Shown here one piece after another: positions 390 through 33,168 of a DNA stretch of 64,000 nucleotides (the stretch's first letter is position 1; each line of letters starts with the position of its first letter). Below the pieces are notes generated by a model. The model had not been told where the DNA came from. It worked only from the letters and a program-made list of their open reading frames with translations, and made no database searches. The translations under genes were made by a program, and so were the position numbers. The stretch spans positions 124,001 to 188,000 of IMG/VR virus record IMGVR_UViG_3300042453_005404, one strand, 5' to 3'.

Positions 390-393
390 TATC

Positions 394-984: not shown

Positions 985-1019
985 TTTACTTCTCTGGGGC
1001 AGGGTGATATACTGTTTCC
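985..1019 (+). promoter_or_regulatory. sigma70-type early promoter, leaderless
   Basis: TTTACT-17nt-TATACT-6nt-ATG(1020). Confidence 0.8.
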
Positions 1020-1199
1020 ATGAAGAACGAAGAAGTGGATCTTCTGTTGGAGTCCATTCGTAAGAATCTGGAAGAGATTGCTATGGTTGAGCCTGACCTG
1101 CGTTCTTATCGGGATTGGAAGACTCGTTTGGAGTGTCTTGCTGAGTCCTTGGATAGGGATCTGCGGCAAGCAAAGCGTTGGGCGTCTTTCAAGGAATAA
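1020..1199 (+). CDS. hypothetical 59-aa protein (missed by ORF track)
   Basis: MKNEEVDLLLESIRKN...WASFKE*; starts exactly 6 nt after the -10 box. Confidence 0.75.
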   Translation: MKNEEVDLLLESIRKNLEEIAMVEPDLRSYRDWKTRLECLAESLDRDLRQAKRWASFKE

Positions 1200-1203
1200 T
1201 CCC

Positions 1204-1238
1204 TTTACTTCTCTTCTCCAGTAAGATAGAGTAGAAAC
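1204..1238 (+). promoter_or_regulatory. sigma70-type early promoter, leaderless
   Basis: TTTACT-17-TAGAGT-6-ATG(1239). Confidence 0.8.
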
Positions 1239-1733
1239 ATGACTAACATTGACACTCTGTTCTCGTTTGCCTTGAACAAGCTTACGGCAGACCGTGAGCG
1301 GCTCAATAGCCTTCTTGAAAAGCAGAAGGGGACCGATATCGGTCGTTTCATGGAGAGGGCTCTGGAATGGCGTACAGAGGCTTCCAAGATGCAACTTCTG
1401 TGGGAGCTCTTTCATGAAGTGATTGATATGTCTGATCTTGGGTTTATTGGGAGTTTTGTGAAGTTTGTAGTAAACGACCTTCTCGACGACGGTGCCTTTA
1501 GGGTTGAGTGGCGCAAGGCTTTTCTTGACGAAAACAAGCGTCTTGTTTGGCTTGGTGGGGATTTCAAGACTGTTTTGACGGACAAGGATGATCCCAAGGC
1601 TGAACCTGTTGTTGTTTACGATGTTGACGAGGGAACGCAGGATGTTGCTTTGTTGATGGAGGCTATGGATCACAAGGAGTGGGAAGTTTTGCAGCGGCAA
1701 GAACTTGAAGCTTCTTGCCAAGATGCGGAATAA
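1239..1733 (+). CDS. hypothetical early protein
   Basis: 164-aa ORF with dedicated promoter. Confidence 0.75.
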   Translation: MTNIDTLFSFALNKLTADRERLNSLLEKQKGTDIGRFMERALEWRTEASKMQLLWELFHEVIDMSDLGFIGSFVKFVVNDLLDDGAFRVEWRKAFLDENKRLVWLGGDFKTVLTDKDDPKAEPVVVYDVDEGTQDVALLMEAMDHKEWEVLQRQELEASCQDAE

Positions 1734-1737
1734 TCTT

Positions 1738-1772
1738 TTTACTTCCAAGTGATGTTGTGGTAGAGTAAAACC
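1738..1772 (+). promoter_or_regulatory. sigma70-type early promoter, leaderless
   Basis: TTTACT-17-TAGAGT-6-ATG(1773). Confidence 0.8.
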
Positions 1773-1973
1773 ATGAACCACAACGAGATGCAGAACTTCG
1801 CAACGAACAACGGTCTTGGTACGATCCATTTTGAGACTCGTATTGCTCTCAACACGGGTCGTCCCATCGAGGTTGGATATGTCTGGGTGAACGGGCATCG
1901 TGAGCTCTTTTGCAAGCGTAGCCAGAACACCGAGTTTCACCTCTGCAACGACTACAGGAAACTCGCAGAATAA
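1773..1973 (+). CDS. hypothetical early protein
   Basis: 66-aa ORF with dedicated promoter. Confidence 0.7.
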   Translation: MNHNEMQNFATNNGLGTIHFETRIALNTGRPIEVGYVWVNGHRELFCKRSQNTEFHLCNDYRKLAE

Positions 1974-1976
1974 TCC

Positions 1977-2011
1977 TTTACTCTTCCAGAACGCTCTGAT
2001 AGGATTGAACC
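1977..2011 (+). promoter_or_regulatory. sigma70-type early promoter, leaderless
   Basis: TTTACT-17-TAGGAT-6-ATG(2012). Confidence 0.8.
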
Positions 2012-2227
2012 ATGAACATCACGATCAAGTTTGAGAATGAAAAAGCTGCTCTCCACTTTGCTCATTGGCTTTGTGGCCAAGGTGAACAAGATTATAGGAT
2101 TTGGATGGAATGCCGAGAACAAGAGGAAGCTGGCAGCATTTCAGCTACGGAGTTTGTGTATCACAAGAATAACGAGTTTGTTCCCGATGGAGAGATCAAG
2201 GTGGTTCTTGGTAGGTTCTCAGAATAA
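2012..2227 (+). CDS. hypothetical phage protein (FxxWLCGQGEQDY motif)
   Basis: 71-aa ORF with dedicated promoter. Confidence 0.7.
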   Translation: MNITIKFENEKAALHFAHWLCGQGEQDYRIWMECREQEEAGSISATEFVYHKNNEFVPDGEIKVVLGRFSE

Positions 2228-2231
2228 TCCC

Positions 2232-2266
2232 TTGACTTTTCCAGAACGATCTGGTATACTGTTTCC
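2232..2266 (+). promoter_or_regulatory. sigma70-type early promoter, leaderless
   Basis: TTGACT-17-TATACT-6-ATG(2267). Confidence 0.85.
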
Positions 2267-2629
2267 ATGAAGACGGTAGAGAACAACATGATGACGTTCA
2301 ACCAAAACTACATTCTGTTCCTTGACGACGAGCGCACGATTGAAATGGTTGACAGAAGTGCATGGCCCGATGGGATGCATATTCTGATCGCACGCTCGTC
2401 TGATGATGCCAAGAACATTGTCTATCGTTGCGGTGACCCTGCGTTTTGTTCGTTTGATCACGACCTTGGGGGCACCGACACTGCGATGGTTTTTCTCAAG
2501 TGGTATGCCAACGTGCATAGCGACGAGAACACCGTGATTCCTTCTTTCGTTGTTCATAGTGCCAATCCTGTTGGTGCGAAGAACATCATTGCCTTTATGG
2601 ATTCTTGGAAGCGGTCGCAAACTCTCTGA
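2267..2629 (+). CDS. cyclic-phosphate processing receiver (cREC-like) domain protein
   Basis: LFLDDER, SFDHDLG and VHSANPVG motifs. Confidence 0.8.
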   Translation: MKTVENNMMTFNQNYILFLDDERTIEMVDRSAWPDGMHILIARSSDDAKNIVYRCGDPAFCSFDHDLGGTDTAMVFLKWYANVHSDENTVIPSFVVHSANPVGAKNIIAFMDSWKRSQTL

Positions 2630-2642
2630 TAGGATTAGTAGT

Positions 2643-2972
2643 ATGGAACACGTTTTGAGCACAAAAAGCGTAAGTCACCAACTCAAGATTGGTGGGTTGC
2701 ACCAAGTCAATAGAAATATCTGGGTTATGTATGCTTCATATTCTGAAGCAGAGAATGCTTCAATCGCAACGATTGACCCAAAAGCTTTTGCTGCTTTCTC
2801 TTCTATTCTTAAAGGAAACATTCGCTATCTTAAGCCAAACGAAAGATTTGTTGCGTTGGAAGATACAAACCATATTGTAAAGCTTCTTTCAGAAGATGGT
2901 GAAGTAAGATATATTTCCGTGGCCAGCGAACGATATCTCAATAACTCGATTTCCTTTGTAAAGGTTCGATAA
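2643..2972 (+). CDS. small beta-barrel (SH3-like) paralog family member
   Basis: LKIGGL...FVALE...KLLSEDGEV pattern shared with downstream paralogs; ATG at 2643. Confidence 0.6.
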   Translation: MEHVLSTKSVSHQLKIGGLHQVNRNIWVMYASYSEAENASIATIDPKAFAAFSSILKGNIRYLKPNERFVALEDTNHIVKLLSEDGEVRYISVASERYLNNSISFVKVR

Positions 2973-2975
2973 GCC

Positions 2976-3620
2976 ATGCGTGTTGCTCATGCCTCCGATC
3001 TTCACAGCAACGTTCTTGTGTTGAAAAATATCGACACAACGAAGATTGATGCTTTTATTCTCACTGGTGACTTCTTTCCCAACACTACCCGTGGAAATGT
3101 TGAAAAAGAAATCAACTTCCAAACCGATTGGTTCAAGAGGAAGCGAGAACCAATCTTTCGTGCTCTTGGAGATAAACCCGTGATCACTGTTGATGGCAAC
3201 CATGACTTTATCTCTCTGGGAGATATGCTCAAGCATTACGCTTATGCTGGAGAGGTTCACCAAATCAGTGAGCATGAGATTGTGGAGTTTGGTGGATTAA
3301 AGTTCGCTGGTCACGGTTATATTCCTTGGATTGAAGGAGAATGGCGTGGAGAGCTCAGAACACCAGAAATGATGCAGGTTGTTGACAGGGTGTGGGATCA
3401 CGGGAACGCAGATATTCTTGTTACCCATGCTGCTCCTGCTGGTATTCTTGCTGGCCAATGGGGATGTAATGTGTTGTCAAACCGTTTGATGTATGGAGAT
3501 CATACATTTACGCATCACTTCTTTGGACACGTTCACGTTCATATTCCGCAAGAGGAAACGGTAAACGGAACCAAGTTTTACAACTCAGCAACGTGCTGTC
3601 AGATCGTGGAGATTTTCTAG
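2976..3620 (+). CDS. calcineurin-like metallophosphoesterase
   Basis: SDLH, LTGD, GNHD, THxAP and FGHVH motifs. Confidence 0.9.
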   Translation: MRVAHASDLHSNVLVLKNIDTTKIDAFILTGDFFPNTTRGNVEKEINFQTDWFKRKREPIFRALGDKPVITVDGNHDFISLGDMLKHYAYAGEVHQISEHEIVEFGGLKFAGHGYIPWIEGEWRGELRTPEMMQVVDRVWDHGNADILVTHAAPAGILAGQWGCNVLSNRLMYGDHTFTHHFFGHVHVHIPQEETVNGTKFYNSATCCQIVEIF

Positions 3621-3621
3621 T

Positions 3622-3879
3622 ATGAAACACAACCACTGGGATATTGTTGAATGTTCTTATTGCAGAGAACAAGAAGCGCCAACCGACGAAGGCTTACACT
3701 CTGAATATGTGCAGCTACAAGGTGCCGTAGAAGAGCTATTAGCCTCATTAGAGGCACGCAAACAGTTGGATGAAGGATTCCGTGGTATGGGACACAACAT
3801 CCTTGTAGAGCGTGCTAGTGGTTTTAATGGCCATATTAGAACGTTAAAAAGACTTGTGAGTTGGAAAGAAAGTAAATAA
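3622..3879 (+). CDS. hypothetical protein
   Basis: ORF in operon, CxxC near the N-terminus. Confidence 0.55.
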   Translation: MKHNHWDIVECSYCREQEAPTDEGLHSEYVQLQGAVEELLASLEARKQLDEGFRGMGHNILVERASGFNGHIRTLKRLVSWKESK

Positions 3880-4109
3880 TGGTTGGTGCTTTAGCTTTTT
3901 GCAGATCGGTTATCGATTTGTTGAGTATGTTTCAATGGTACAGAAAGCTTCGTGGTGGACATTGGGAGCTTTGGTGGATTGATGCACCCGTATCTTCCCA
4001 TGTGTGGCTACAGAAAGATCATTATGACAAACGTCCCGGTTTGGGTATATCCTGCGACAACTGTGAAGATTACTCTTCAAGATATTCCAGCAAAAATCCT
4101 TACAGATAA
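3879..4109 (+). CDS. hypothetical protein (WYRKLRGGHW motif)
   Basis: TAATG overlap with the upstream gene. Confidence 0.55.
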   Translation: MVGALAFCRSVIDLLSMFQWYRKLRGGHWELWWIDAPVSSHVWLQKDHYDKRPGLGISCDNCEDYSSRYSSKNPYR

Positions 4110-4113
4110 TACC

Positions 4114-4148
4114 TTTATACAAACATTTTGGTGTGATATTCTATTGAT
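4114..4148 (+). promoter_or_regulatory. sigma70-type early promoter, leaderless
   Basis: TTTATA-17-TATTCT-6-ATG(4149). Confidence 0.7.
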
Positions 4149-4430
4149 ATGAAATATTTTAAAATCGGTAAGCTTTATACTTTAAATCTTCCGGGTACTC
4201 GACATTTGGGAGCTGCTCTATTTGCATTTCGTGATCCGCAAAAAGATCATATGGGAAATCTGACCGGCGAAGATATTGCGAAAAATGATGTTTTCGTTTT
4301 GTTGGAGTATTGCAACTTTCCTTACTCGGTTCAACAACACAGACTTCATGTCCTCACCAAAAACGGAACAACAGGTTGGTTAACACTATCAAACGTTTTG
4401 ACTGATTATATGGTTCCAGCTAGTATGTAA
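4149..4430 (+). CDS. SH3-like paralog family member
   Basis: KIGKLY...FVLLE...VLTKNGTTGW. Confidence 0.7.
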   Translation: MKYFKIGKLYTLNLPGTRHLGAALFAFRDPQKDHMGNLTGEDIAKNDVFVLLEYCNFPYSVQQHRLHVLTKNGTTGWLTLSNVLTDYMVPASM

Positions 4431-4432
4431 TC

Positions 4433-4717
4433 ATGAAAATCACCGAGCTAAAGATTGGTAAAATCTACACGTACAGAGGAGATCCTAACCTTGCTGTGTA
4501 TGCAACACCAGAATTGTTCAACACCAAAAAAGTTGGTAGAATATATCCAATGGATAACATTGTGGTGCTAGCAACAATAAAGGAGTTTGCGTATTGTTGG
4601 ATTCAAGTGCTTTCCGCAAACGGGATTGTTGGTTGGTTTGTCTGGAACATAGACGGACGAGCACCACAAGATGTTGATCGTTACTTTATTGAGGAGATAA
4701 CATCACAGTATGCATGA
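4433..4717 (+). CDS. SH3-like paralog family member
   Basis: KIGKIY...VVL...VLSANGIVGW. Confidence 0.7.
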   Translation: MKITELKIGKIYTYRGDPNLAVYATPELFNTKKVGRIYPMDNIVVLATIKEFAYCWIQVLSANGIVGWFVWNIDGRAPQDVDRYFIEEITSQYA

Positions 4718-4958
4718 AACAATCTATTCAATCGATATCGGTAAGCTGTACAGAACCCCACTTTACAACAAAGTGGCACTCACAATCTCTAGCGAAGAAG
4801 ACTCCGCAGAATGCGGCTTCTTGCATCCAGATGAATGGTTTGTGCTGCTCGATAAAAACGTTTCAAGGCATTCAGCAAAAATCCTAACACCTAACGGCGA
4901 GGTGGGCTGGGTACAATGGTACAGTGGCACACGGTTCGAACAACCAGATGAAGAATAA
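4710..4958 (+). CDS. SH3-like paralog family member
   Basis: DIGKLY...FVLLD...KILTPNGEVGW. Confidence 0.7.
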   Translation: MHETIYSIDIGKLYRTPLYNKVALTISSEEDSAECGFLHPDEWFVLLDKNVSRHSAKILTPNGEVGWVQWYSGTRFEQPDEE

Positions 4959-4962
4959 TCTC

Positions 4963-5223
4963 ATGACAAACCTAAACAAATATATTGGCAAAATCTGCGA
5001 ATGCAATGTGCGGCTTCCGTATGTATGGGACATGATAGCTGACAGCAATATGGAAATCTTGCCAAGCAACACATGGTTTGTTATAATCAAGGTAGAAGAA
5101 CTAGTTGGCGTCGAAGAAGGGTATTATGACGTTTACCTTTTAACCAAAGAAGGTGAACTACGCCTGACAACCGTTCATCGTGAGGAACTAGACAACATTC
5201 GAATGGTGACACATGAACCATAA
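4963..5223 (+). CDS. SH3-like paralog family member (divergent)
   Basis: YIGKI...FVII...LLTKEGE. Confidence 0.6.
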   Translation: MTNLNKYIGKICECNVRLPYVWDMIADSNMEILPSNTWFVIIKVEELVGVEEGYYDVYLLTKEGELRLTTVHREELDNIRMVTHEP

Positions 5224-5437
5224 ACAACTCTATGTCCTCCTAGACTCAGATCACGATATCGTTGAAACATTCCCAGAAAACTCAAGCTTCGATTATATGT
5301 TCCAACGTAAACAAGCTGTCTGCCCATATGGAACTCTACATATAGCAACTCTTGTTCTCGGTCCAGAACAACATGAACGTATCCAAACAAACAGTGAACC
5401 AACAAGAGCAGCTAAATCAGTAAAGGTATCACCATGA
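5213..5437 (+). CDS. hypothetical protein
   Basis: ORF overlapping the upstream gene end. Confidence 0.5.
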   Translation: MNHKQLYVLLDSDHDIVETFPENSSFDYMFQRKQAVCPYGTLHIATLVLGPEQHERIQTNSEPTRAAKSVKVSP

Positions 5438-5540
5438 CTTTACTCTCTCACTCCATAGCCTTCATCTACGGTTTCCTGTCATTCCCAATCGTGCTATACA
5501 TCGCCGCAAATATCAAAAAACACCTTGATTTCAAGCATAA

Positions 5541-5594
5541 ATAAAAAAAGAAATATTCCTTTAGATATTCACGTTCTTTTGCTATTCTAATATC
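5541..5594 (+). promoter_or_regulatory. early promoter with A-tract UP element, leaderless
   Basis: AAAAAAAGAAA...TTTAGA(5560)-17-TATTCT-6-ATG(5595). Confidence 0.8.
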
Positions 5595-5966
5595 ATGAAG
5601 AACGAAGCAAACAGCTCCTCTCGCTACTGGAACCACAATCATCCCCGTGCCTTTGAAGGCATGAAGATGCGTGCTCCAGAGCGCAATCTCACTCTCCCGT
5701 GTCCCATCTGCAAAGGTCACGGTGCCTTCCATCTCTCGCATAACGACACTAACAACGGGTGTTATCCCTACTTCGATGCCTCTTGTGGACAGTGCAACGG
5801 TTGGGGTTACGTCAATCCCAACTCCATCGATGCTACCTGCATCCATGAATGGAAGGGGCTTACCTACGAGGAATCAAAGGCTCGTAACCTGTACACCGCT
5901 CGCAGCTTCTCTAACTGCGTCTGCATCCACTGCAACACCGTGATGGGTGTGGACTCCAGCGATTGA
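5595..5966 (+). CDS. DnaJ-type CxxCxGxG zinc-finger protein
   Basis: CPICKGHG, CGQCNGWG, plus CxHxW...CxHC. Confidence 0.7.
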   Translation: MKNEANSSSRYWNHNHPRAFEGMKMRAPERNLTLPCPICKGHGAFHLSHNDTNNGCYPYFDASCGQCNGWGYVNPNSIDATCIHEWKGLTYEESKARNLYTARSFSNCVCIHCNTVMGVDSSD

Positions 5967-5986
5967 TTTCAGAAAGAGAGAAAGAG

Positions 5987-6205
5987 ATGCACCACATCAT
6001 GCACCACAACGACTTCTTTCGGATCTATGATGGAAACATCATCGATGCGGAAAGCTTCTATACGAGCATGGCTTGTGACCATGCCGATAGGATCGCCGCT
6101 CACAACGGCGAGCCTCGCATCGTTCTTGTCACCGAAAACGGCGAGGTTGAAACCTCGCTCCCTATCAATGGCAAGAACCATACATGCAACCGGTCTTGCC
6201 GATAA
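5987..6205 (+). CDS. hypothetical protein
   Basis: ATG at 5987 after the purine-rich leader TTCAGAAAGAGAGA (same leader at 8211). Confidence 0.55.
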   Translation: MHHIMHHNDFFRIYDGNIIDAESFYTSMACDHADRIAAHNGEPRIVLVTENGEVETSLPINGKNHTCNRSCR

Positions 6206-6206
6206 T

Positions 6207-6524
6207 ATGAACAATCTTCAAATCGGTAAGATGTACTTGGTTAAAGAGTGGTTTTGGCTTCTGTTTCCAACGAAAAAAGTGGCGGGGGAGGCCGTGGACC
6301 CGGAGGCGGACGAAGCTGCCGACAACAGTTTGGTGGAAGCGAGGCGTGATGCAAAATGGATAAGCAAAGATTATAACTGCAACGTTGTTGTTGTTGAAGA
6401 AAACACTTGCTTTGTCTTGCTTGAACAAGATGAAGTATATTTCAAGGTTCTTGACTCAAACGGTAACATTGGTTGGATTTATTGCTCTGATTTCTCTTGC
6501 TATTTCAAGATTGTGAAGGAATAA
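6207..6524 (+). CDS. SH3-like paralog with GC-rich variable insert (copy 1)
   Basis: MNNLQIGKMY...LFPTK-[variable]-YNCNV...LDSNGNIGWI. Confidence 0.8.
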   Translation: MNNLQIGKMYLVKEWFWLLFPTKKVAGEAVDPEADEAADNSLVEARRDAKWISKDYNCNVVVVEENTCFVLLEQDEVYFKVLDSNGNIGWIYCSDFSCYFKIVKE

Positions 6525-6530
6525 AGAACA

Positions 6531-6866
6531 ATGAACAATCTTCAACTCGGTAAGATGTACTGCATGAAACAGTATTTCCGGCTTCTGTTTCCAACGAAAG
6601 AACTGCTGGTGGCCTACGACGTGCTCAACGACGTGCTGGTTCGTCGGGCCGGGCGGGAAGGCGCTGGGGCGGCTCATGCATTGGCAACACGGTTAAGCGA
6701 ACATTACAACTGCAACGTTTCTTTTGTTGAACCAAACACTTGCGTTGTTTTGCTTGAAGTAGATGAAGATGAACGTTGCTATAAACTGCTTGACTCAAAC
6801 GGTAACATTGGTTGGATTTATTGTTGTGATGATTTCTCCAACTATTTCGAACTTGTAAAGGGATAA
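6531..6866 (+). CDS. SH3-like paralog with GC-rich variable insert (copy 2)
   Basis: flanks near-identical to copy 1. Confidence 0.8.
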   Translation: MNNLQLGKMYCMKQYFRLLFPTKELLVAYDVLNDVLVRRAGREGAGAAHALATRLSEHYNCNVSFVEPNTCVVLLEVDEDERCYKLLDSNGNIGWIYCCDDFSNYFELVKG

Positions 6867-6872
6867 AAAGCA

Positions 6873-7202
6873 ATGCAACTCGGCAAAATGTATTTGGTTA
6901 AAGAGTGGTTTTGGTTTCTTTATCCAACAAAAGAAATGGTGGCCGAGGCGTACACCTGCGCCGTGATCAACGTGCCCAACAGCACCCACATTTCCGTTTA
7001 CGCCCATGGAAAAGCAAAAACAATCGGTACAACCAAAAGTTGCAACGTTTATGTCGCTGAACCAAAAACTTGCGTTGTTCTTCTCGATCAACAAAAAACA
7101 GAACTAGGAAAGGTTTACCAAATCCTTAACTCAAACGGTAACATCGGTTGGATTCGTTGCCACGGCGCTTTCACAGACTATTTCGAAATAATCAACCAAT
7201 AA
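6873..7202 (+). CDS. SH3-like paralog with GC-rich variable insert (copy 3)
   Basis: flanks near-identical to copies 1 and 2. Confidence 0.8.
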   Translation: MQLGKMYLVKEWFWFLYPTKEMVAEAYTCAVINVPNSTHISVYAHGKAKTIGTTKSCNVYVAEPKTCVVLLDQQKTELGKVYQILNSNGNIGWIRCHGAFTDYFEIINQ

Positions 7203-7214
7203 ACTCAAAAACAT

Positions 7215-7490
7215 ATGCTAACAATCGCAATCAACGAAATCTCGTTCAATATCCCAGATAACTACGTCGAGTGGAATATCAGTTATAACATCCCAAACGC
7301 AGATAAACTTGCTACAAATCTAACACTTGCCCTAATCAATGCCATCGCCGCCCCCAACAATAACCAAGCATCCTATATCATGAACAAAGCCTTGAACAAT
7401 ACCAACGCCTCAAAACAAACTTGCGATACCGCTAAACATTACCTCAATATCGCTCGTAACCATAACTTTAACTTCAATATCAATATATAA
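7215..7490 (+). CDS. hypothetical Asn-rich protein
   Basis: 91-aa ORF with extreme A/C-rich, G-poor composition. Confidence 0.45.
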   Translation: MLTIAINEISFNIPDNYVEWNISYNIPNADKLATNLTLALINAIAAPNNNQASYIMNKALNNTNASKQTCDTAKHYLNIARNHNFNFNINI

Positions 7491-7715
7491 TCACCAAAAT
7501 TGCCCCTCAGAATATCGCTATTCACATGGCTGATGCAAACTGCCTCTGCCAGCTTGTGTGCGCCAGTTTTCCGAAAACCCTTATTTACATAGGTAAATCA
7601 ATAGTTTTCTACAACAACCAACACCAACAAATAGGTAAATATTCACAACCAAAATCTTCTACCAAAATAAAATCAAAAAAAACATAGTGTCATACCATAT
7701 ATCGTCAATCATTGC

Positions 7716-7785
7716 TAACCATGAGAAACCATAGGAAACCATAGGATATTATAAGAAACCATGGGAAACCATAGCAAACCATATG
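7716..7785 (+). repeat. tandem decamer array (about 7 units, consensus AAACCATAGG)
   Basis: TAACCATGAG AAACCATAGG AAACCATAGG ATATTATAAG AAACCATGGG AAACCATAGC AAACCATATG. Confidence 0.9.
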
Positions 7786-7924
7786 GGGGATTAAGCCCCT
7801 GTTCTATAACCCATTGATTCGTTCTACGGTTCGCAACGCTTTGCGTGACTTTCTGGCGGGCGATGGGGGAGCCGTGTTCGCTATGAGCAACATGGGCAAT
7901 CCTTGGCATTAAAGTTGATTGTCT

Positions 7925-8012
7925 CAAAACCCCTTTAAATCCAGCGTTTTAAGAAAAAAGAAAATAATCTTTAGAAAATCAGCAACAGGTGATATTCTAA
8001 GAGCATGAAGAA
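7925..8012 (+). promoter_or_regulatory. early promoter, direct-repeat copy 1
   Basis: TTTTAAGAAAAAAGAAAATAATC-TTTAGA(7970)-17-TATTCT-AAGAGC-ATGAAGAA. Confidence 0.85.
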
Positions 8013-8169
8013 CGACGAGATTCAAATGGTGATGGTTCTCATTGTGGCTACGATTGCGGTTGCTATGATCGTGGTCGTGGCGACCGGACTCAACGAGTGC
8101 GGTGCAGGTCAGAGGGCTGTGACGGGGGTAATGAACGGTCACTACGTTTCTCTTTGCATCGACAAGTAA
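8005..8169 (+). CDS. 54-aa single-TM membrane protein (missed by ORF track)
   Basis: MKNDEIQMVMVLIVATIAVAMIVVVATGLNEC...CIDK*; leaderless start. Confidence 0.7.
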   Translation: MKNDEIQMVMVLIVATIAVAMIVVVATGLNECGAGQRAVTGVMNGHYVSLCIDK

Positions 8170-8177
8170 AAAAGTGT

Positions 8178-8206
8178 TTTACTTTTCGATCTCGACCTGA
8201 TAGAGT
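8178..8206 (+). promoter_or_regulatory. sigma70-type early promoter (leadered)
   Basis: TTTACT-17-TAGAGT, then an AGAGAGG leader. Confidence 0.75.
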
Positions 8207-8234
8207 AGTCTTCAGAAAGAGAGAGAGGCAAACG

Positions 8235-8399
8235 ATGATGAATCCTGATCTCACTGTCGCTGCGGAAGGTGAACTCTACGAGGACGCCCTCCCGTTGGCT
8301 CTCCGTTGCAAGAACGAGAAGGTGAACGAAAACGAAGACGACGAGAATGACCGGGACGTTGATGAGATGGCGCACTTTCGCTGTATGCTTTCCTATTGA
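8235..8399 (+). CDS. small acidic protein
   Basis: MMNPDL...ENEDDENDRDVDEM; start after RBS. Confidence 0.55.
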   Translation: MMNPDLTVAAEGELYEDALPLALRCKNEKVNENEDDENDRDVDEMAHFRCMLSY

Positions 8400-8454
8400 T
8401 CTGGAATGGAGGGGAGCGCATTCCACAATAACGCTCAATTCTTCTCAAACTCAC

Positions 8455-8541
8455 CAAAACCCTGTAAATCTAGGCTTTTAAGAAAAAAGAAAATAATCTT
8501 TAGAATATTGCCTTTGGGTGATATTCTAAGAGCATGAAGAA
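8455..8541 (+). promoter_or_regulatory. early promoter, direct-repeat copy 2
   Basis: same motif as 7925; TTTAGA(8499)-17-TATTCT-AAGAGC-ATG(8534). Confidence 0.85.
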
Positions 8542-9397
8542 GACGACGAACAAGGCTGCTGTGAAGACCACCACCAAGAAGACCACTGTGAAGAAGGCTG
8601 CTGTGAAGAAGACCACGAAGAAGACTGAAAACTCTGGCAATCATCGTTTGGCTCAAACCGTCGAGGCTGGCCGTTTCTCGGATATCAAGATCCCTGATGC
8701 GCTGCGTACCACGCTCAAGACTGGTTGGGAGTATATCGATGCTCTCTTCACTGGTGAGGGCATTCGTCCTTCGACCTGCTGCATGGTGACCGGTCTGCCC
8801 GGTGGCGGCAAGACCACGATCTCTCTCCAGCTTGCTAACAGCCTTGCAGAGCAGGGTCATGTGGTGCTCTACAATAGCTGCGAGGAGAGTGGTGCGCAGA
8901 TCAAGATGAAGCTTGAGAAGATGGAGTTTAACGCTCTTCTGGAGAGCAACAACGCTTACTTCTCCAGCTTCTACGATATCTCGGATATCCTTGATTTTGC
9001 CAACAAGGTTCGCAAGCAGCACAAGCTTGAGGCTGGTAAGGGTTTCTTCCTGTTCGTTGACTCGCTTCAGACGATTGAGCGTGCTTCGAAGGGTGCCGGT
9101 CGTCCTGCTGGCCCTGCGCAGCAGCAGTGCGATGCGATGTGGGACGTTGCTGGTTGGTGTAAGGAAAGCATGGCCGTTGCAATGATCATCGGTCAGGTTA
9201 CCAAGGATGGTACCTTCGCTGGCAAGCAGGAAGTCAAGCACGCCGTTGACTGTCACCTGCACCTTGCGATGGATACCGACAAGAAGTCGGAAACCTATCG
9301 TCAGCGTGTTGCCGAAATGCAGAAGAATCGGTTTGGGACAAGTGGCCTCTTCTTCCCCTACGATATCTCTAGCAAGGGTATCGAGTTCCAGCAGTAA
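8534..9397 (+). CDS. RadA/Sms-like RecA-fold ATPase with Lys/Thr/Ala-rich N-terminal tail
   Basis: Walker A GLPGGGKTT, EES, VDSLQT, GQVTKDGTFAG, KHAVD, KNRFG; no Zn finger or Lon-like domain. Confidence 0.85.
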   Translation: MKKTTNKAAVKTTTKKTTVKKAAVKKTTKKTENSGNHRLAQTVEAGRFSDIKIPDALRTTLKTGWEYIDALFTGEGIRPSTCCMVTGLPGGGKTTISLQLANSLAEQGHVVLYNSCEESGAQIKMKLEKMEFNALLESNNAYFSSFYDISDILDFANKVRKQHKLEAGKGFFLFVDSLQTIERASKGAGRPAGPAQQQCDAMWDVAGWCKESMAVAMIIGQVTKDGTFAGKQEVKHAVDCHLHLAMDTDKKSETYRQRVAEMQKNRFGTSGLFFPYDISSKGIEFQQ

Positions 9398-9433
9398 AAC
9401 AAAACGTGCCCTGCAATGCAGGATGACAGAACG

Positions 9434-9473
9434 AGCTCCTAGAGGTGAAAGCTTCTAGGAGCTTTTTCTTTTT
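9434..9473 (+). terminator. rho-independent terminator
   Basis: AGCTCCTAGAGGT-GAAA-GCTTCTAGGAGCT followed by a T-run. Confidence 0.85.
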
Positions 9474-23079: not shown

Positions 23080-26000
23080 CTAATCGATTTTGTAAATCTT
23101 GTTTTGATAAGCAGAGAATCCAAAATCCGATTTATCAAAAAGTCCAACCACAACGTCGTTCTGAATTAGATTCACTTCACCTCTCCAACCCCAAATAAAA
23201 CAAGTAACCTCTTTATTCGCTTCAGCAAACAAACGAAGCTTCATATACGTCTTACCTGTCTTAGTCTTAGCCAATCCAGCAGAAGCTACAATAGCCCAGT
23301 AATTACCCTTCTCACTCCAGTTATCGATAGACTCAAAACCAAGCTCATCAAGCTTTACCCGAGCTTCCTTCGACAACAGAAGATCGAAATCAACTGAACC
23401 AGCTAGCTCCTTGGTAAACTCCATCTTCTCTGCCTTGGTCCAATCCTCCATACCTTGAACCTCTGCAATAGCAGCTTCAAGAGGTTGAGTGATATCGTTG
23501 TTCTTCTTGCGTGAAGTAATACGCTTAAACTCATCATATCGATCAACAAGCACAGCATGGACTTGCTTGTAGTTCTTGAACAACTTACCATCACCAACGA
23601 TATCCATCGAGCCCAACGCTTCAAGCTTCACAAGAGCTGATAGAGCACTCTTGTTGAACTTGCTGTGTCTCCATGAACCATCTTGGTTAATCAGCAAGTC
23701 CCGCACAGAGTTATATGGACGGAACTGTTGAATCTCGCTTACAGCAGTTTTGCCAACGTGCTTGAGCGAACTAAAGCTTGGCACAAGAGTTTTGTTGAAA
23801 GTAGGATGTGAGATAACCTCATATTCAGACACGTTAATGTCTGGCTTGGTCAACTCATATCCAAGAGCCTTGGCTTCTTTAATGGCAATAGCCTTTGGAT
23901 CTTCCTTGCCTGTTACCTTACCCTTAGAGATTGCACAGTAATCAATATACGTAGCAATCCATTCATCTGGATAATAGGTGAGGAACCAAGCACATTGCCA
24001 TGTTGTGATTGCATAGCATACAGCGTGTGATTTGTTGAAGCTATAAGCGACGAGTTTTTCCATTTCATCAAAGATATCGCCGCAATCTTCTGCGTCGATA
24101 TTGTTGGCCTTTGCGCAAGCATCAATAAAGCTCTGACGAAGCTTGTTACGTTCTGCTTGTGCCTTTTCCTTGTTGTTGATTTCTTTCTTGGTAAATGCCT
24201 TACGGATACCATCTGTATCTTCAAGGGGAACCCCAGCAAGCTTATGATAAATCATTTGAAGCTGCTCTTGGAACACAAGGAGTCCAGAGGTTTCAGCAAA
24301 TACTTCCTTGAGAAGTGGATGCTTGTATACAACTGAATCTGGGTTTGCACGGTTATTCAAGAAGCGTTGATCTACCTTAAGAGATAGAGGACCGGGACGA
24401 AAGATAGACGTAGCCACAGCAATATCTGTGATAGACTTTGGCTTCATTTGACGCATGAAGTTTTGAGTCTTGTCGTTGATGAACTGGAAAATACCAGTGT
24501 AGTTACCCTTCCAGAAAACGTTCTCATAAACCTTTGGATCAGTCAATGGGTTGTTGTCGGGATGTAGATTATCCCAGAACCATTGCTTGATTTGCTTGAA
24601 CGTTGGATGCTTGATGCCTTGCTTTTGCAAGATACGTCGCACACAGTTCTCAAACATACGAAGTGTACCAAGACCAAGAATATCGAACTTGAGTAGACCA
24701 AACTCTTCAAGGTGACGAAAGTTTACACCTTCTGGCCATGGAGTTTGTAGCTCGCCGCCAGCCTTGATAAGAGGCATACCTTCACGGCTGTTCTCGGTAA
24801 TAATCACTCCTCCAGCGTGACGAGACAAACCACGCATTTGCTTGAATAGCACCTTAATGGTTGTTTGGAACTCTGGATAAGTTTCCATGAGTTGTTGGAA
24901 AGTAGGAGAATCATTCATTGCGGCTTCAAAGGTCATAACCCATGTGCCACGATCAAAGCCTTCTACTTGCTTGGCAACATCAAGCACTTCCTTTTCAATC
25001 TTACCCGTTGCTGCGTTAATCTCTTCGAAGGGAAGATTGTGCAAGCGAGCAACATCCTTGATAAGAGAACGAAGTTGCAACTGAGCGAAGTTGGTTACAG
25101 GAATAACGTTTTCTGAACCAAAGAACTCGATAAGAAGTTTTACTGCACGATCCCGGTCAGAGAAGTCAGAGTCAATATCTGGGAATGATTTTTTAGACTT
25201 AACCAAAAATCTAGCGAACAGAAGACCGAAACGAATCGGATCAACTTGTGTTATGTTCAACACATATGACAGAAGAGATCCAGCAGCAGAACCTCTGCCG
25301 TTACCGATAAGCATTTCCTTACCAACAATGTCCATGATCTTGTGATATGTGAGGAAATACTTAGCAAAGCGAAGATGCTTAATAGTATCAAGCTCATTCT
25401 TAAGACGCTTGATATAAACATCATCATGATTACGTCCTACGTTACGTAGACCATTAATCGCAAGCTGCACAAGTTGCTTGAAGGCTACGTCATCCTCAGA
25501 CATGCCCGCAGAAGCCTCTAGGAGTTTATCTAGAGCATTCTTCTCGATTAGACGACCAATGCCGGGAAGCTTTACAGAACGGTCAATAAAAACGTCTCCA
25601 ATAAGATCGTGAGCGATATCGTGAGTACGTTCAATAGCATCGCAAATAAGTTGATCGTCGGTGTACAGTTCTGGGTATGCTGCCTTTTGCTCAAGGTAGG
25701 TATTCCAAACTTGTTCTGCGTTCTTTGGATAAAGCTCGCACTTAAGCTCTTCAACCTTTTGTGGTAGAGTGTTTGGATCAATGGTACCCTTGGTTTTCGA
25801 AGCCCAAGCCATAGCCTTGTAGACTTCACGTTCCTTCCAATGGTTAGGATTGGAATAGTGAGAGTCAACAGTAACAACAAGCTTAAGACCTGTTTCCTTG
25901 GCAAGCTCCATGAGATAGAAGTTAACAAGGTGTTGAGCCGTTAGACGGTTCATCTGGAGTTCAAGGTAGTAGTTCTCCGGTCCACCAAGAGCATCAACAA

Positions 26001-26763: not shown

Positions 26764-26798
26764 AGTGCTATAATACCAGCTATTAATCAGATTCTAAA
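26764..26798 (-). promoter_or_regulatory. leaderless early-type promoter of dnaE
   Basis: TTTAGA-17-TATTAT-6-ATG. Confidence 0.75.
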
Positions 26799-29893: not shown

Positions 29894-30964
29894 TCACTTC
29901 ATACAAAGATATCTGTCAGATACGTACTTCAAAGCAACTCGTCCATGCCGAGAATCAAATCGTTCGCCACGCTCTAGTTTCACAACAATACCTTCACGAA
30001 CCTTTTGCTTTGGAAAACAACTGTCTTCTTCAGCAAGTTTTTCTAGCATCGATGCATCAAGAGCTCCACGATAGAGAACAGGAACAGTTTCACAAATACC
30101 CGCACAGTAAACAGGATTGTCAAACATATCAGCGTTATCGACCCAACGGCCATGATCCAAAATGTCAAATGCCGCAAAGCCATATTGGCCTTGAACTTTT
30201 CCATAATGGAAATCTGATCCTTGAATGCTTGGCCCATATACTTCTCCGTATATAGCCATGCTTGGATGGTTCTTACACCATTCTTCAATCCAAGGATTTT
30301 GCTCAAGTGCAGTCCACCACACACAATCTGGAGCCGTAATGGTCTTTGTTACTTCGATACCATTTTCATCAATCCATGTAACGTCCTTTACATGAGTTCC
30401 CGGCTTCATCTTCCATGTTGTTCTGGAACCACAAAACATTTCACCGTTATGAAATACATAACGTGCGTTTGTGCCATGAATCTTTTCGGTAAGAATCACA
30501 CGTTCCCCCTCATTAAAGAGTTTGTGATACTTTTTGAATGATTCTAGATCATAGTGTGGCACTGGAATATCTGGACCCTTTGCTTGCACTCCAGAAGCCA
30601 TCCCAAAGCCTTTTGGAGCGGGTGGTTCGTACCGTTCTACCCCAAGTTGCTCCATAACGTTATCGCCCTCTACAGAGCCTTCTGGGGCCGGGATAAGCAG
30701 TCCGTATGAAGGTTCACCACGGAACCGACGCATGGTAATACGCAGACGAGGTTTGCCCTTGCCATCATCAAGGAACTTGAACTCGTTACGATCAAGAGGA
30801 ACAGTGTAATCTGGCTCGATATAAGCCATAAGATCATCAACTTTGTGTGCTCCTTTACGGATAACACATTGATATCCCCAAACGTTTGTGAGTTCTAGAG
30901 AATCAGCGTTGGGATGCTGGAGAATAGATTCGATGCGAATAACTTTGACTTCGTGTGTGCTCAT
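29894..30964 (-). CDS. RNA ligase, DRB0094/Rnl5 family
   Basis: N-terminal HPNADSL OB domain; TEKIHGTN, YGEVYG, FDI, REGIVVK, LK; leaderless promoter TTTAGT-17-TAAAGT-6-ATG. Confidence 0.9.
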   Translation of the reverse strand: MSTHEVKVIRIESILQHPNADSLELTNVWGYQCVIRKGAHKVDDLMAYIEPDYTVPLDRNEFKFLDDGKGKPRLRITMRRFRGEPSYGLLIPAPEGSVEGDNVMEQLGVERYEPPAPKGFGMASGVQAKGPDIPVPHYDLESFKKYHKLFNEGERVILTEKIHGTNARYVFHNGEMFCGSRTTWKMKPGTHVKDVTWIDENGIEVTKTITAPDCVWWTALEQNPWIEEWCKNHPSMAIYGEVYGPSIQGSDFHYGKVQGQYGFAAFDILDHGRWVDNADMFDNPVYCAGICETVPVLYRGALDASMLEKLAEEDSCFPKQKVREGIVVKLERGERFDSRHGRVALKYVSDRYLCMK

Positions 30965-31003
30965 AGCATTACTTTACCACAAGCGGTAAAACAACTAAAG
31001 ATA

Positions 31004-31536: not shown

Positions 31537-31596
31537 GTTTCGTCTTTACCCTACTCTTATAATCTACCATCCTATATTATGATTCTCAAACTATTT

Positions 31597-33034: not shown

Positions 33035-33168
33035 TCTGTCGTTGTCTATGTTCTTAGTCTAGCAGTCTCTTATTCGTTTGTAAAGCTATTTCAGATTTTT
33101 TAGGAAGTCTTCTGGATCGTAGAGTTTTTTATTGCTAACGTCATAGATTTTTTCAAGTTTTACGTCTT

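What the first reader, a model, noticed from the sequence alone, without database searches (positions are those of the whole stretch)
985..8541. One promoter per gene with ATG at +1: an array of leaderless gene cassettes
Eight-plus early genes (1020, 1239, 1773, 2012, 2267, 4149, 5595, 8005, 8534) have the same geometry: -35 TT(T/G)A(C/G/T)(T/A), 17 nt, -10 TAnnnT, exactly 6 nt, then ATG with no Shine-Dalgarno. At 1197, 1731, 1971, 2225 and 4107 the previous gene's TAA lies inside a conserved junction, A-TAA-TCC(C)-TTTACT, so each unit is promoter plus gene. The same geometry occurs on the minus strand for dnaE, RNA ligase, uvsE and primase. Inference: systematic leaderless translation, which may point to a leaderless-tolerant host or to resistance to host translation shutdown. 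The repeated junctions could also drive gene shuffling, analogous to the repeated early-promoter cassettes (PeSLs) of T4-like phages.
Basis: partly seen in the sequence, partly recalled or inferred. Interest (0 to 1): 0.68.

Follow-up and report, generated by a model that had tools for sequence, protein, structure and literature searches.

The report
Promoter-plus-ATG cassettes in a giant phage
An uncultured freshwater giant phage places about thirty host-type promoters so that transcription should begin at the A of the start codon, giving messages with no ribosome-binding leader, and these promoter-plus-ATG modules also mark where small genes are swapped between related phages.

Summary
All nine listed plus-strand genes and the four minus-strand genes (dnaE, RNA ligase, UvdE, primase) have -35 TT(T/G)Ann, 17 nt, TAnnnT, 6 nt, ATG.

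Across the 260-kb phage record this pattern occurs 30-34 times with the ATG exactly 6 nt after the -10. Every other spacing gives 0-4 hits, and shuffled sequence gives about 3.

- **Promoter features.** The sites carry an extended -10 (TGn), an A-rich upstream element and a pyrimidine at -1 in 30 of 31 cases.
- **True starts.** The ATG is the real N-terminus: Pfam profiles begin at residues 2-10, and orthologues align from residue 1.
- **Conservation.** Relatives keep the geometry while the spacer sequences diverge.
- **Not universal.** Downstream genes in operons and the late structural genes use Shine-Dalgarno leaders, so "one promoter per gene" holds only for the 1020-2267 run.
- **Shuffling.** Related contigs show cassette insertion, replacement and order swaps with breakpoints in the promoter modules, which supports the PeSL analogy.

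No RNA data exist, so the start site is inferred. The host is unknown. I rate this a new variant of known kinds (phiYS40-type leaderless phage mRNAs and T4 PeSL cassettes).

The parts
985..1199 (+). Module 1: -35 TTTACT 985-990, TGa + TATACT 1008-1013, gtttcc, ATG 1020; ORFan gene 1020-1199 (59 aa)
   Evidence: no Pfam or PHROG match
1197..1733 (+). Module 2: the previous gene's TAA 1197-1199 lies in GAATAATCCC; -35 TTTACT 1204-1209, -10 TAGAGT, ATG 1239; ORFan gene 1239-1733 (164 aa)
1731..1973 (+). Module 3: TAA 1731-1733 in the junction; -35 TTTACT 1738-1743, -10 TAGAGT, ATG 1773; ORFan gene 1773-1973 (66 aa)
1971..2227 (+). Module 4: TAA 1971-1973 in the junction; -35 TTTACT 1977-1982, -10 TAGGAT, ATG 2012; gene 2012-2227 (71 aa). 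The G002 relative holds a 75%-identical copy in swapped order.
2225..2629 (+). Module 5: TAA 2225-2227 in the junction; -35 TTGACT 2232-2237, -10 TATACT, ATG 2267; cREC_REC-domain gene 2267-2629 (120 aa). TATACTGTTTCCATGAAGA is identical to module 1. Strain breakpoints fall at 2220-2253.
2643..4109 (+). Operon genes behind module 5 with no promoter of their own: 2643-2972, 2976-3620 (Metallophos), 3622-3879, 3879-4109. They are tightly packed or overlapping, and some have weak AGGA/AAGG motifs.
4107..4430 (+). Module 6: TAA 4107-4109 in the junction; -35 TTTATA 4114-4119, TGa + TATTCT, ATG 4149; gene 4149-4430. A strain breakpoint falls at 4117, inside the -35.
4398..4717 (+). Possible module: -35 TTGACT 4398-4403, -10 TAGTAT, ATG 4433; gene 4433-4717. 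It lies inside the 3' end of the previous gene and is conserved in L049.
5560..5966 (+). Module 7: -35 TTTAGA 5560-5565, -10 TATTCT, aatatc, ATGAAGAACGA 5595; Cys-rich gene 5595-5966 (123 aa)
7922..8169 (+). Module 8: 91-nt repeated module with an upstream A-tract, -35 TTTAGA 7970-7975, TGa + TATTCT, ATG 8005; gene 8005-8169 (54 aa)
8178..8399 (+). Same promoter type but with a leader: -35 TTTACT 8178-8183, -10 TAGAGT 8201-8206, predicted start near 8213. A purine-rich 20-nt leader (AGAAAGAGAGAGAGGCAAACG) precedes ATG 8235.
8451..9397 (+). Module 9: second copy of the 91-nt module (84% identical to 7922-8012); -35 TTTAGA 8499-8504, -10 TATTCT, ATG 8534; KaiC/RadA/DnaB-like ATPase gene 8534-9397
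9433..9464 (+). The only strong terminator-like hairpin (14 pairs plus a T-run) in 1-10000
23080..26798 (-). DnaE gene (1227 aa) with -35 TTTAGA, -10 TATTAT and ATG 26763 at predicted +1. The G002 and G008 orthologues keep the geometry; L058 and L059 do not.
29894..30999 (-). RNA ligase gene (356 aa) with -35 TTTAGT, -10 TAAAGT, ATG 30964
46365..47338 (-). UvdE gene (312 aa from ATG 47303) with -35 TTTAGA, -10 TATGAT
55341..56335 (-). Primase-like gene (319 aa) with -35 TTGACT, -10 TAGCCT, ATG 56300
31554..31589 (-). Same promoter type with no ATG at +1; predicted start is 18 nt before tRNA-Ile. An internal check that the motif is a promoter.
33049..33084 (-). Same promoter type; predicted start is 15 nt before tRNA-Leu(caa)
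33648..33683 (-). Same promoter type; predicted start is 9 nt before a tRNA at 33565-33639

Best explanation
The stretch is part of the variable early region of an uncultured freshwater myovirus of more than 260 kb. The phage is distantly related to T4. 'Early' here means pre-replicative and is inferred from gene content.

The region holds ten of at least 31 copies of a 60-90 bp expression module:
- an A-rich UP-like element, (A)ATAAT(A/C)C, which often contains the stop codon of the previous gene;
- a -35 hexamer TT(T/G)A(C/G)(T/A);
- 17 bp ending in T-n-TG-n (an extended -10);
- a -10 hexamer TAnnnT;
- 6 bp ending in a pyrimidine;
- ATG, usually followed by AAG or AAC.

The host's primary-sigma RNA polymerase should start 7 nt after the -10, at the A of ATG. 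The first gene of each unit would then be made from a leaderless mRNA, which ribosomes bind through its 5'-terminal AUG without a Shine-Dalgarno pairing. Later genes in a unit use Shine-Dalgarno sites or stop-start coupling. Late structural genes use a different motif (CTATTTAT) and 20-50 nt Shine-Dalgarno leaders.

Because the module carries the promoter, the start codon and sometimes the first two or three codons, any ORF fused in frame behind it is expressed. Its many near-identical copies serve as homology patches for recombination, which inserts, deletes, replaces and reorders small genes of unknown function.

Shown: the geometry, its excess over chance, its conservation, the true N-termini, and the breakpoints. 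Inferred: the transcription start, leaderless translation, the early timing, and recombination as the mechanism.
For: - **Excess over chance.** 30 sites at 6 nt against 0-4 at other spacings. 34 observed against 2.9 in shuffles, and 27 of 57 promoters defined without regard to ATG carry ATG at +1.
- **Promoter hallmarks.** Conserved -35, TG-extended -10 and an A-rich upstream element. Pyrimidine at -1 in 30 of 31 sites against 60% for all genes, p=3.5e-6.
- **Internal control.** The same motif lies 9-18 nt before tRNA genes.
- **True N-termini.**
  - Pfam profiles start at residue 2-3 of MnmA, amidoligase and Metallophos, and at residue 8-10 of ThyA and RNase T.
  - These ATGs are the first start codons of their ORFs.
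  - JGI gene calls agree.
- **Conservation.**
  - Relatives G002, G001 and G008 show the same 6-nt peak.
  - G006, whose DnaE is 55% identical and whose -35 is TTGACA-type, peaks at 5-6 nt.
  - Orthologues at 44-92% identity stay leaderless-type and mostly align from residue 1.
  - The dnaE promoters of G000, G002 and G008 differ in sequence but not in spacing.
- **Polymerase.** No RpoB-like gene was found in the record. The one phage sigma factor seems to lack region 4.2, so the conserved -35 points to the host sigma.
- **Contrast with late genes.** Late genes have CTATTTAT and Shine-Dalgarno leaders.
- **Shuffling.**
  - The cREC cassette has four different left neighbours and three right neighbours.
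  - One strain has a 468-nt insertion between duplicated copies of 2220-2253, and another has a breakpoint at 4117 inside a -35.
  - Genes 2012 and 2267 are in swapped order in G002.
  - Homology blocks between G000 and G002 begin 40-115 nt upstream of, or within about 20 nt of, the module ATGs.
Against: - No transcript data exist. The only runs that hold the sequence are labelled RNA-Seq but behave as DNA contigs, so the start site and the leaderless state are inferred from geometry.
- The host is unknown, and so is its capacity to translate leaderless mRNA.
- Many modules are copies of one another, so the 31 sites are not 31 independent events.
- The -35 consensus TTTAGA differs from TTGACA at two positions.
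- Not all breakpoints fall in modules. Examples are 5006, 5212 and the roughly 100-nt gene remnant in L050.
- An E. coli-consensus promoter scan of 1-10000 is not enriched overall: 21 hits against 16.6 expected.
Confidence: 0.72

Rival explanations
1. The modules are promoters, but transcription starts one to a few nucleotides away from the A, or at several positions. That would give very short leaders. Some of the encoded proteins would then start at a downstream in-frame ATG.
For: - Start-site choice can vary by 1-2 nt around the seventh position after the -10 (general knowledge of sigma-70 promoters).
- In G006 the peak is split between 5 and 6 nt, and G008 has four sites at 7 nt.
- The cREC gene has a second ATG 21 nt downstream, and that ATG is the start of its G002 orthologue.
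Against: - The 6-nt spacing is exact in 30-33 G000 sites, with almost none at 5 or 7.
- A pyrimidine at -1 next to an A at +1 is the preferred start dinucleotide, and it is present in 30 of 31 sites.
- Pfam domains begin at residues 2-3 in several enzymes, which leaves no room for a downstream start.
Confidence: 0.13
2. The TTTAGA/TATTCT promoters are read by polymerase carrying the phage's own sigma factor (window 38693-39472, minus strand). They would then form a middle class rather than an immediate-early class. The leaderless design would still hold, but the timing would differ.
For: - The phage encodes an RpoD/RpoS-like sigma factor.
- The -35 consensus TTTAGA is not the canonical TTGACA.
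- From memory and unverified: the late promoters of Bacillus phage SPO1 (CGTTAGA / GATATT) look similar.
- Many of the genes served are replication and repair genes rather than typical immediate-early genes.
Against: - Every family profile stops matching 30-45 positions before its end, so region 4.2, which reads the -35, seems to be missing from the phage sigma. The -35 is nevertheless the best-conserved part of the module.
- The distant relative G006 uses canonical TTGACA in the same geometry.
- A separate motif, CTATTTAT, with no -35 partner precedes the late genes and fits a sigma without region 4.2 better.
Confidence: 0.1
3. The repeated motif is mainly a DNA site for recombination or for a phage regulator, and its likeness to a promoter and its position next to ATG are secondary.
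For: - Breakpoints cluster in the motif.
- In some copies the -35 (TTTAGAATAT) and the -10 region (ATATTCTAA) are inverted repeats of each other. The copy at 8499-8531 forms a 14-bp hairpin, which could be an operator-like dyad.
Against: - The conserved positions are those that RNA polymerase reads (-35, TG, A-11 and T-7 of the -10, 17-bp spacer), while the spacer sequence drifts.
- The same motif stands in front of tRNA genes.
- The dyad is present in only a minority: 7 of 31 sites have a folding z-score below -2.
Confidence: 0.03

Closest known systems
PeSL (promoter-early stem-loop) cassettes of T4-type phages (Arbiol et al. 2010, PMC2839356; Comeau et al. 2014, PMC4122927)
   Same: - Repeated strong sigma-70-like promoters with an AT-rich upstream part.
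- They flank small genes of unknown function in variable regions of a T4-related myovirus.
- Insertions, deletions and replacements between relatives have crossovers inside the motif, including between the -35, the -10 and the ATG.
- The phage here has gp23-like, gp17-like and baseplate-wedge genes.
   Different: - PeSLs end in a Shine-Dalgarno sequence plus a start codon and contain a stem-loop that terminates or attenuates transcription.
- Here there is no Shine-Dalgarno sequence and the ATG sits at the predicted +1.
- Adjacent cassettes leave only 3-4 nt between the stop codon and the -35.
- A stem-loop is not a general feature: mean z is -0.67 and 7 of 31 sites are below -2.
- Mini-circles could not be tested.
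Thermus phage phiYS40 leaderless transcripts (Sevostyanova et al. 2007, as cited in PMC12340547 and summarised in PMC3594737)
   Same: A large phage that relies on the host polymerase and makes many of its mRNAs without a leader.
   Different: - In phiYS40 the middle and late transcripts are the leaderless ones. From memory, their promoters have only a -10-like element.
- Here the leaderless type is the -35/-10 class in front of replication, repair and small unknown genes, while late structural genes have Shine-Dalgarno leaders.
- The replication modules differ: phiYS40 has a family A polymerase, and this phage has DnaE.
- No promoter-cassette shuffling is described for phiYS40.
Genes with the -10 element next to the ORF in Deinococcus-Thermus and Actinobacteria (PMC12340547, PMC4007540, PMC4633059)
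   Same: A TAnnnT hexamer about 6-7 nt before the start codon gives leaderless mRNA. This is the same geometry as here.
   Different: - Those are cellular genomes.
- From memory: many of their sites lack a conserved -35, and GTG starts are common.
- Here the -35 is strongly conserved, and among the 57 extended -10 promoter matches 27 have ATG at +1 and only 2 have GTG.
- Whether the host belongs to such a phylum is unknown.
Phage lambda cI mRNA from promoter PRM (classical single leaderless phage mRNA; from general knowledge, reference listed in PMC12340547)
   Same: The transcript starts at the A of AUG and is translated without a Shine-Dalgarno sequence.
   Different: That is one regulatory gene in one phage. 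Here it is a genome-wide design of at least 31 units conserved in a clade.

Membership tests
Leaderless mRNA gene | Transcription start at (or within a few nt of) the start codon | not testable with these tools
   No RNA reads. The four runs that hold the sequence are kept as contigs and behave as DNA.
Leaderless mRNA gene | -10 element about 6-7 nt upstream of the start codon, leaving no room for a Shine-Dalgarno sequence | tested here: met
   Exactly 6 nt in 30-33 sites, against 0-4 (17-nt spacer) or 0-7 (16-18-nt spacer) at any other spacing
Leaderless mRNA gene | The codon at +1 is the genuine N-terminus | tested here: met
   It is the first start codon of the ORF. Pfam profiles begin at residues 2-10. 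Orthologues mostly align from residue 1.
Leaderless mRNA gene | Start-site context that favours initiation at that base (pyrimidine at -1, purine at +1) | tested here: met
   Pyrimidine at -1 in 30 of 31 sites, p=3.5e-6 against other genes
PeSL cassette (T4-type phages) | Strong sigma-70-like early promoter with an AT-rich upstream region | tested here: met
   Consensus aAatacCTTTAgA-N17(TnTGn)-TATtcT. Promoter activity itself was not tested.
PeSL cassette (T4-type phages) | Stem-loop that acts as terminator or attenuator within the motif | tested here: not met
   Mean folding z is -0.67 and only 7 of 31 sites are below -2. There is one terminator-like hairpin in 10 kb, and it is outside the modules.
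PeSL cassette (T4-type phages) | Shine-Dalgarno sequence and start codon at the 3' end of the motif | tested here: not met
   Only 6 nt separate the -10 from the ATG. The idea that the -10 doubles as a Shine-Dalgarno sequence was not supported (Fisher p=0.41).
PeSL cassette (T4-type phages) | Concentrated in variable regions next to genes without known relatives | tested here: met
   The cassette genes 1020, 1239, 1773, 2012, 4149 and 5595 have no PHROG match and no Pfam match above threshold. Gene content differs between close relatives.
PeSL cassette (T4-type phages) | Insertion, deletion and replacement breakpoints between relatives fall inside the motif | tested here: met
   Breakpoints at 2220-2253, 4117, 973 and 2222, and a swapped gene order in G002. 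Some breakpoints lie elsewhere.
PeSL cassette (T4-type phages) | Formation of excised mini-circles | not testable with these tools
   Needs inverse PCR or raw reads from an infection
phiYS40-type leaderless programme | Leaderless transcripts belong to the middle and late classes | tested here: not met
   Late structural genes here have CTATTTAT plus Shine-Dalgarno leaders. The leaderless type serves replication, repair and small unknown genes. Timing is inferred from gene content.

The most novel reading that the evidence does not exclude
The phage lineage separates its gene classes by mode of translation initiation. Pre-replicative genes would be leaderless, read by 70S ribosomes through a 5'-terminal AUG and independent of the anti-Shine-Dalgarno sequence. 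Late genes would depend on Shine-Dalgarno sites.

That would let early phage proteins be made while canonical initiation is impaired, either by the phage or by a host defence that attacks the translation apparatus. The phage also carries a tmRNA, 14 tRNAs in this window and several RNA-repair genes.

In this reading the portable promoter-plus-ATG module is an expression adaptor without a ribosome-binding site, able to capture any ORF.
Probability: 0.2. Interest if true: 0.8.

Novelty: new variant of a known kind. Interest (0 to 1): 0.6.

Why it matters
- **A new way to build a phage expression unit.** If the starts map to the A of ATG, this clade would be the first T4-related lineage known to run its early programme on leaderless mRNAs. 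In the papers I could search, the only genome-scale phage precedent is phiYS40, where the late classes are the leaderless ones.
- **Translation mode as a layer of timing control.** The contrast with the Shine-Dalgarno-led late genes suggests that initiation mode could help control timing or help escape a shutdown of canonical translation.
- **Gene capture.** The promoter-plus-ATG module explains how small new genes can be captured and expressed at once without a ribosome-binding site.
- **Practical uses.** The module offers a compact promoter-plus-start part for synthetic constructs. Gene callers that assume a ribosome-binding site may misplace such starts; the JGI call missed gene 5595.

Tried and rejected
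- **Transcript evidence.** The only holders are four runs of one aquatic study. They are labelled RNA-Seq but are kept as contigs and behave as DNA, so no 5' ends could be read.
- **Close cultured relative.** None was found by DNA search. The nearest by protein are Microcystis phage Mel-JY01 (33 shared genes at 23-49% identity) and Flavobacterium phage immuto. Neither shows the 6-nt peak, and neither does the huge phage LR756508.
- **Kinship with phiYS40.** Not supported, because the replication genes differ.
- **Host identity.** It stays open.
  - A 12-kb contig of this phage sits in the MAG 'bacterium WB9_2_064', but that 5.3-Mb bin holds many RpoB-like fragments and looks mixed, so I drew no host from it.
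  - No psbA, WhiB or S21 gene was found in the record.
  - Language-model neighbours of MnmA are mostly Actinomycetota, while those of ThyA are viral or Verrucomicrobiota, so the two do not agree.
  - Kin genomes cannot be drawn for a virus record.
- **Idea that G-rich -10 hexamers double as Shine-Dalgarno sites.** I tested whether TAGGAT, TAAGGT or TAGAGT could serve read-through transcripts of abutting cassettes. The test gave 4 of 26 against 2 of 28, Fisher p=0.41, so I rejected it.
- **General stem-loop in the modules.** Not found.
- **E. coli-consensus promoter scan.** Not enriched in 1-10000, because the local -35 dialect is TTTAGA or TTTACT.
- **Literature.** Searches for leaderless transcripts in cyanophages or other large phages returned only software citations. 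phiKZ has no leaderless transcripts, and all mapped AR9 5' UTRs are 26 nt or longer. The phiYS40 paper itself is not held.
- **tmRNA.** It has no match in the phage collection.

Full report
**What the window is.** The window is bases 124001-188000 of a 260,466-bp IMG/VR virus record (about 70% complete, 40% G+C) from aquatic metagenomes. No cultured phage matches its DNA.

Several proteins place it as a deep-branching relative of the T4 group:
- The major head protein is gp23-like. It is 33% identical to that of Microcystis phage Mel-JY01 and 43% identical to that of Flavobacterium phage immuto.
- The large terminase is about 39% identical to both.
- The record also encodes a baseplate wedge subunit and a tail sheath.

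No RpoB-like polymerase subunit was found in the record, and it encodes one sigma-70-family protein.

**Checking the observation.** I read the sequence directly. That hexamer follows a TT(T/G)Ann hexamer by exactly 17 nt. The four minus-strand cases are DnaE at 26763, an RNA ligase at 30964, UvdE at 47303 and a primase-like gene at 56300.

The stop codons at 1197, 1731, 1971, 2225 and 4107 lie in the junction (G)AATAAT(C/A)C(C), 3 or 4 nt before the -35.

The pattern is far above chance:
- Across the whole record it gives 30 hits with ATG 6 nt after the -10, and 0-4 hits at every other distance from 0 to 30.
- The full pattern gives 34 hits, against a mean of 2.9 and a maximum of 7 in Markov shuffles.
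- When the promoter is defined without looking at what follows (-35 plus TGn-extended -10), 27 of 57 hits have ATG at that exact position.

**Are these promoters whose +1 is the A of ATG?** The consensus is aAatacCTTTAgAtatt...T-TG-n-TATtcT-a..a.c-ATGAa. It has a UP-like A-tract, a -35, a 17-bp spacer and an extended -10.

The base before the ATG is a pyrimidine in 30 of 31 sites here and in 53 of 54 sites across four related phages. For all genes the figure is 60% (p=3.5e-6). A pyrimidine at -1 next to a purine at +1 is the start dinucleotide that bacterial RNA polymerase prefers, about 7 nt after the -10 (established knowledge).

Three copies of the same motif have no ATG at +1. Their predicted starts lie 18, 15 and 9 nt before tRNA genes. 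This serves as an internal check that the motif is a promoter.

Other copies without an ATG at +1 start very short leaders. These leaders begin with the Shine-Dalgarno sequence itself (AGGAG...) or with AGAAAGAGAG..., 12-20 nt before the ATG. The unit at 8178-8235 is one example. The phage keeps its 5' untranslated regions minimal, and the leaderless units are the extreme of that habit.

**Are the ATGs real starts?**
- Each is the first start codon of its ORF.
- An independent JGI gene call uses eight of the nine.
- The enzymes behind such promoters match their Pfam profiles from the first residues:
  - MnmA residue 3 matches profile position 2.
  - Amidoligase residue 2 matches position 4.
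  - Metallophos residue 3 matches position 2.
  - ThyA residue 8 matches position 1.
  - RNase T residue 10 matches position 2.
- Orthologues in relatives mostly align from residue 1 to residue 1.

The genes served are thymidylate synthase, MnmA, a DNA ligase, two RNA ligases, an amidoligase, phosphoesterases, RNase T, UvdE, a primase-like protein, DnaE, a KaiC/RadA-like ATPase, and many small genes with no PHROG match and no Pfam match above threshold. This is a pre-replicative set.

**Conservation.**
- Close relatives G002, G001 and G008 show the same peak at 6 nt.
- G006 is a 320-kb contig whose DnaE is 55% identical and whose -35 is the canonical TTGACA. It has 24 sites at 5-6 nt against a background of about 3.
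- Orthologous pairs at 44-92% protein identity keep the geometry while the spacer and discriminator sequences change.
- Mel-JY01, G004, the huge phage LR756508 and Flavobacterium phage immuto show no such peak.

The design is therefore a trait of this lineage and not of T4 relatives in general. It is also labile: two contigs whose DnaE is 94% identical have another gene and a Shine-Dalgarno-type start in front of dnaE.

**What it is not.** The phage does use Shine-Dalgarno sites. In a crude gene set, 165 of 343 genes have AGGA, GGAG, GAGG or AAGG at -18 to -4, while a control window shows few such motifs.

Late structural genes are preceded by a different motif, CTATTTAT. It occurs nine times, always on the plus strand, and eight copies lie 17-50 nt before a gene start. 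Most of these leaders carry clear Shine-Dalgarno sequences.

The host ribosome therefore uses Shine-Dalgarno pairing, and a host without it is not implied.

'One promoter per gene' holds only for 1020-2267. The other modules in the finding head operons of 3-7 genes.

The phage sigma factor matches RpoD/RpoS-type profiles through regions 2 and 3, but the match stops 30-45 positions before the end of each profile. It probably lacks the part that reads a -35. Because the -35 is the best-conserved part of the module, the host's primary sigma is the likelier reader. The phage sigma fits the CTATTTAT class better. Both points are inference.

**Shuffling.** The modules form repeat families of 42-91 nt:
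- TATACTGTTTCCATGAAGA is identical at 1008-1026 and 2255-2273.
- Segments 7922-8012 and 8451-8541 are 84% identical, from an upstream A-tract through ATGAAGAA.

The start codon and the first codons therefore belong to the module. In this phage the cREC gene carries seven extra N-terminal residues (MKTVENN) compared with its G002 orthologue, which starts at the second ATG.

Natural variants show the following:
- **Insertion.** One strain has 468 nt between two copies of 2220-2253. The new sequence continues with a different -10 and ATG.
- **Breakpoint in a -35.** Another strain diverges at 4117, inside the -35.
- **Replacement.** Contig L050 replaces the four cassettes 1020-2227 with three other small genes that are absent from the whole record. 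Homology resumes at 2222, the first base of the GAATAATCCC junction.
- **Different neighbours.** L051 has a 494-aa gene to the left of the cREC cassette and a Cys-rich gene to its right.
- **Order swap.** In G002 the cREC gene directly follows RNase T, and the 2012 homologue comes after it. Each has its own promoter, and all share the spacer motif CCAGAAC.
- **Unit boundaries.** Homology blocks between G000 and G002 begin 40-115 nt upstream of, or within about 20 nt of, the module ATGs. The unit of homology is therefore promoter plus gene.

Of eight visible breakpoints in the unique part of 900-6899, four lie in modules, which cover about 8% of that sequence (my own count; small numbers). Other breakpoints lie elsewhere, so the modules are preferred sites and not the only ones.

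**Comparison with what is known.** PeSLs of T4-type phages are defined as a strong sigma-70-like promoter with an AT-rich upstream part, a stem-loop terminator or attenuator, and a Shine-Dalgarno sequence plus start codon. They are concentrated next to small unknown genes in variable regions, and they recombine with one another.

The elements here share the promoter, the location and the breakpoints. They fail on two defining features:
- There is no Shine-Dalgarno sequence.
- There is no general stem-loop. The mean folding z-score is -0.67, and 7 of 31 sites fall below -2.

They work like PeSLs but are not members of that family.

phiYS40 is the known phage with many leaderless mRNAs, but there the middle and late classes are the leaderless ones, and its replication genes are unrelated. 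phiKZ has no leaderless transcripts, and all mapped AR9 5' UTRs are 26 nt or longer. The same -10-next-to-ORF geometry is common in the genomes of Deinococcus-Thermus and Actinobacteria.

**Limits.**
- No RNA data were available, so the start site, leaderless translation and early timing are inferred.
- The host is unresolved.
- Many modules are copies of one another. The argument for selection therefore rests mainly on orthologues that keep the spacing while their sequences diverge.

**Verdict.** The leaderless reading is well supported by sequence and comparison but is not proven. The shuffling idea is supported. The ideas about the host and about translation shutdown remain open. I class it as a new variant of known kinds, of moderate to high interest.

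Noticed in passing
window 18569-18917 (-): The phage encodes a tmRNA (Rfam RF00023, 71.3 bits against a gathering score of 47) that ARAGORN missed. The tag reading frame gives ANDNAQPVLSLAA followed by a stop. From memory, an ANDN...AA tag looks proteobacterial, which could hint at the host. It has no match in the phage collection.
   Followed up: partly
window 31285-33639 and 48722-49210 (-): Fourteen tRNA genes lie in two clusters. Rfam found one at 33565-33639 that ARAGORN missed. Three promoters of the same type as the finding lie 9-18 nt before tRNA 5' ends.
   Followed up: partly
window 7707-7783: About eight tandem 10-bp units (AACCATRGGA) lie in a roughly 500-nt non-coding gap (7491-8004) between operons. 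The one-helical-turn period suggests a phased protein-binding array, such as an origin or a regulator site.
   Followed up: no
window 2643-2972, 4710-4958, 6027-7202; genome 49.5-51 kb and 110-123 kb: At least 21 paralogues of a roughly 100-aa protein fill the early regions. Some begin M..L.IGKMY. Those tested have no Pfam or PHROG match (four by PHROG, two of those also by Pfam). Strain variants show deletions between copies, for example 5975 to 6516.
   Followed up: partly
window 38693-39472 (-): The phage sigma-70-family protein matches RpoD/RpoS profiles over regions 2-3 but seems to lack region 4.2. It is a candidate reader of the late motif CTATTTAT.
   Followed up: partly
genome 97523, 173641, 202368, 204402, 207641, 227164, 234927, 241015 (+): CTATTTAT occurs nine times, always on the plus strand. 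Eight copies lie 17-50 nt before gene starts, most with Shine-Dalgarno sequences, including both tail-sheath genes. It is probably the late promoter.
   Followed up: partly
window 2267-3620, 19.0-19.7 kb, 29894-30964; genome 114364, 118719: The phage has a dense set of RNA-repair-type genes. They comprise three RNA ligase genes, a cREC_REC (cyclic-phosphate processing) domain protein, two Metallophos phosphoesterases and an AAA_33/Zeta-toxin-like kinase, alongside MnmA and the tRNAs. This suggests a conflict with host nucleases that cut tRNA or rRNA.
   Followed up: no
window 8499-8531 and other TTTAGA/TATTCTAA modules: The -35 with its next bases (TTTAGAATAT) and the -10 with its next bases (ATATTCTAA) are inverted repeats of each other in some copies. 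At 8534 they form a 14-bp hairpin of -16 kcal/mol. This could be an operator-like dyad or a block to internal initiation on read-through RNA.
   Followed up: partly
L052 (RGVZ01000130.1): A 12-kb contig with 96% DnaE identity to this phage is binned in the GenBank MAG 'bacterium WB9_2_064'. That 5.3-Mb bin also holds many partial RpoB-like matches on other contigs, so it looks like a mixed bin with several large viruses.
   Followed up: partly
window 1-10000: G+C is 42-49% in the first 10 kb, against 36-40% in most of the window. The cassette region may hold recently acquired DNA.
   Followed up: no
window 5466-5846 (-) versus 5595-5966 (+): The public JGI gene call places a 126-aa minus-strand gene here in place of the plus-strand Cys-rich gene that starts at the module ATG 5595. 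Automatic callers may miss starts that lack a ribosome-binding site.
   Followed up: no
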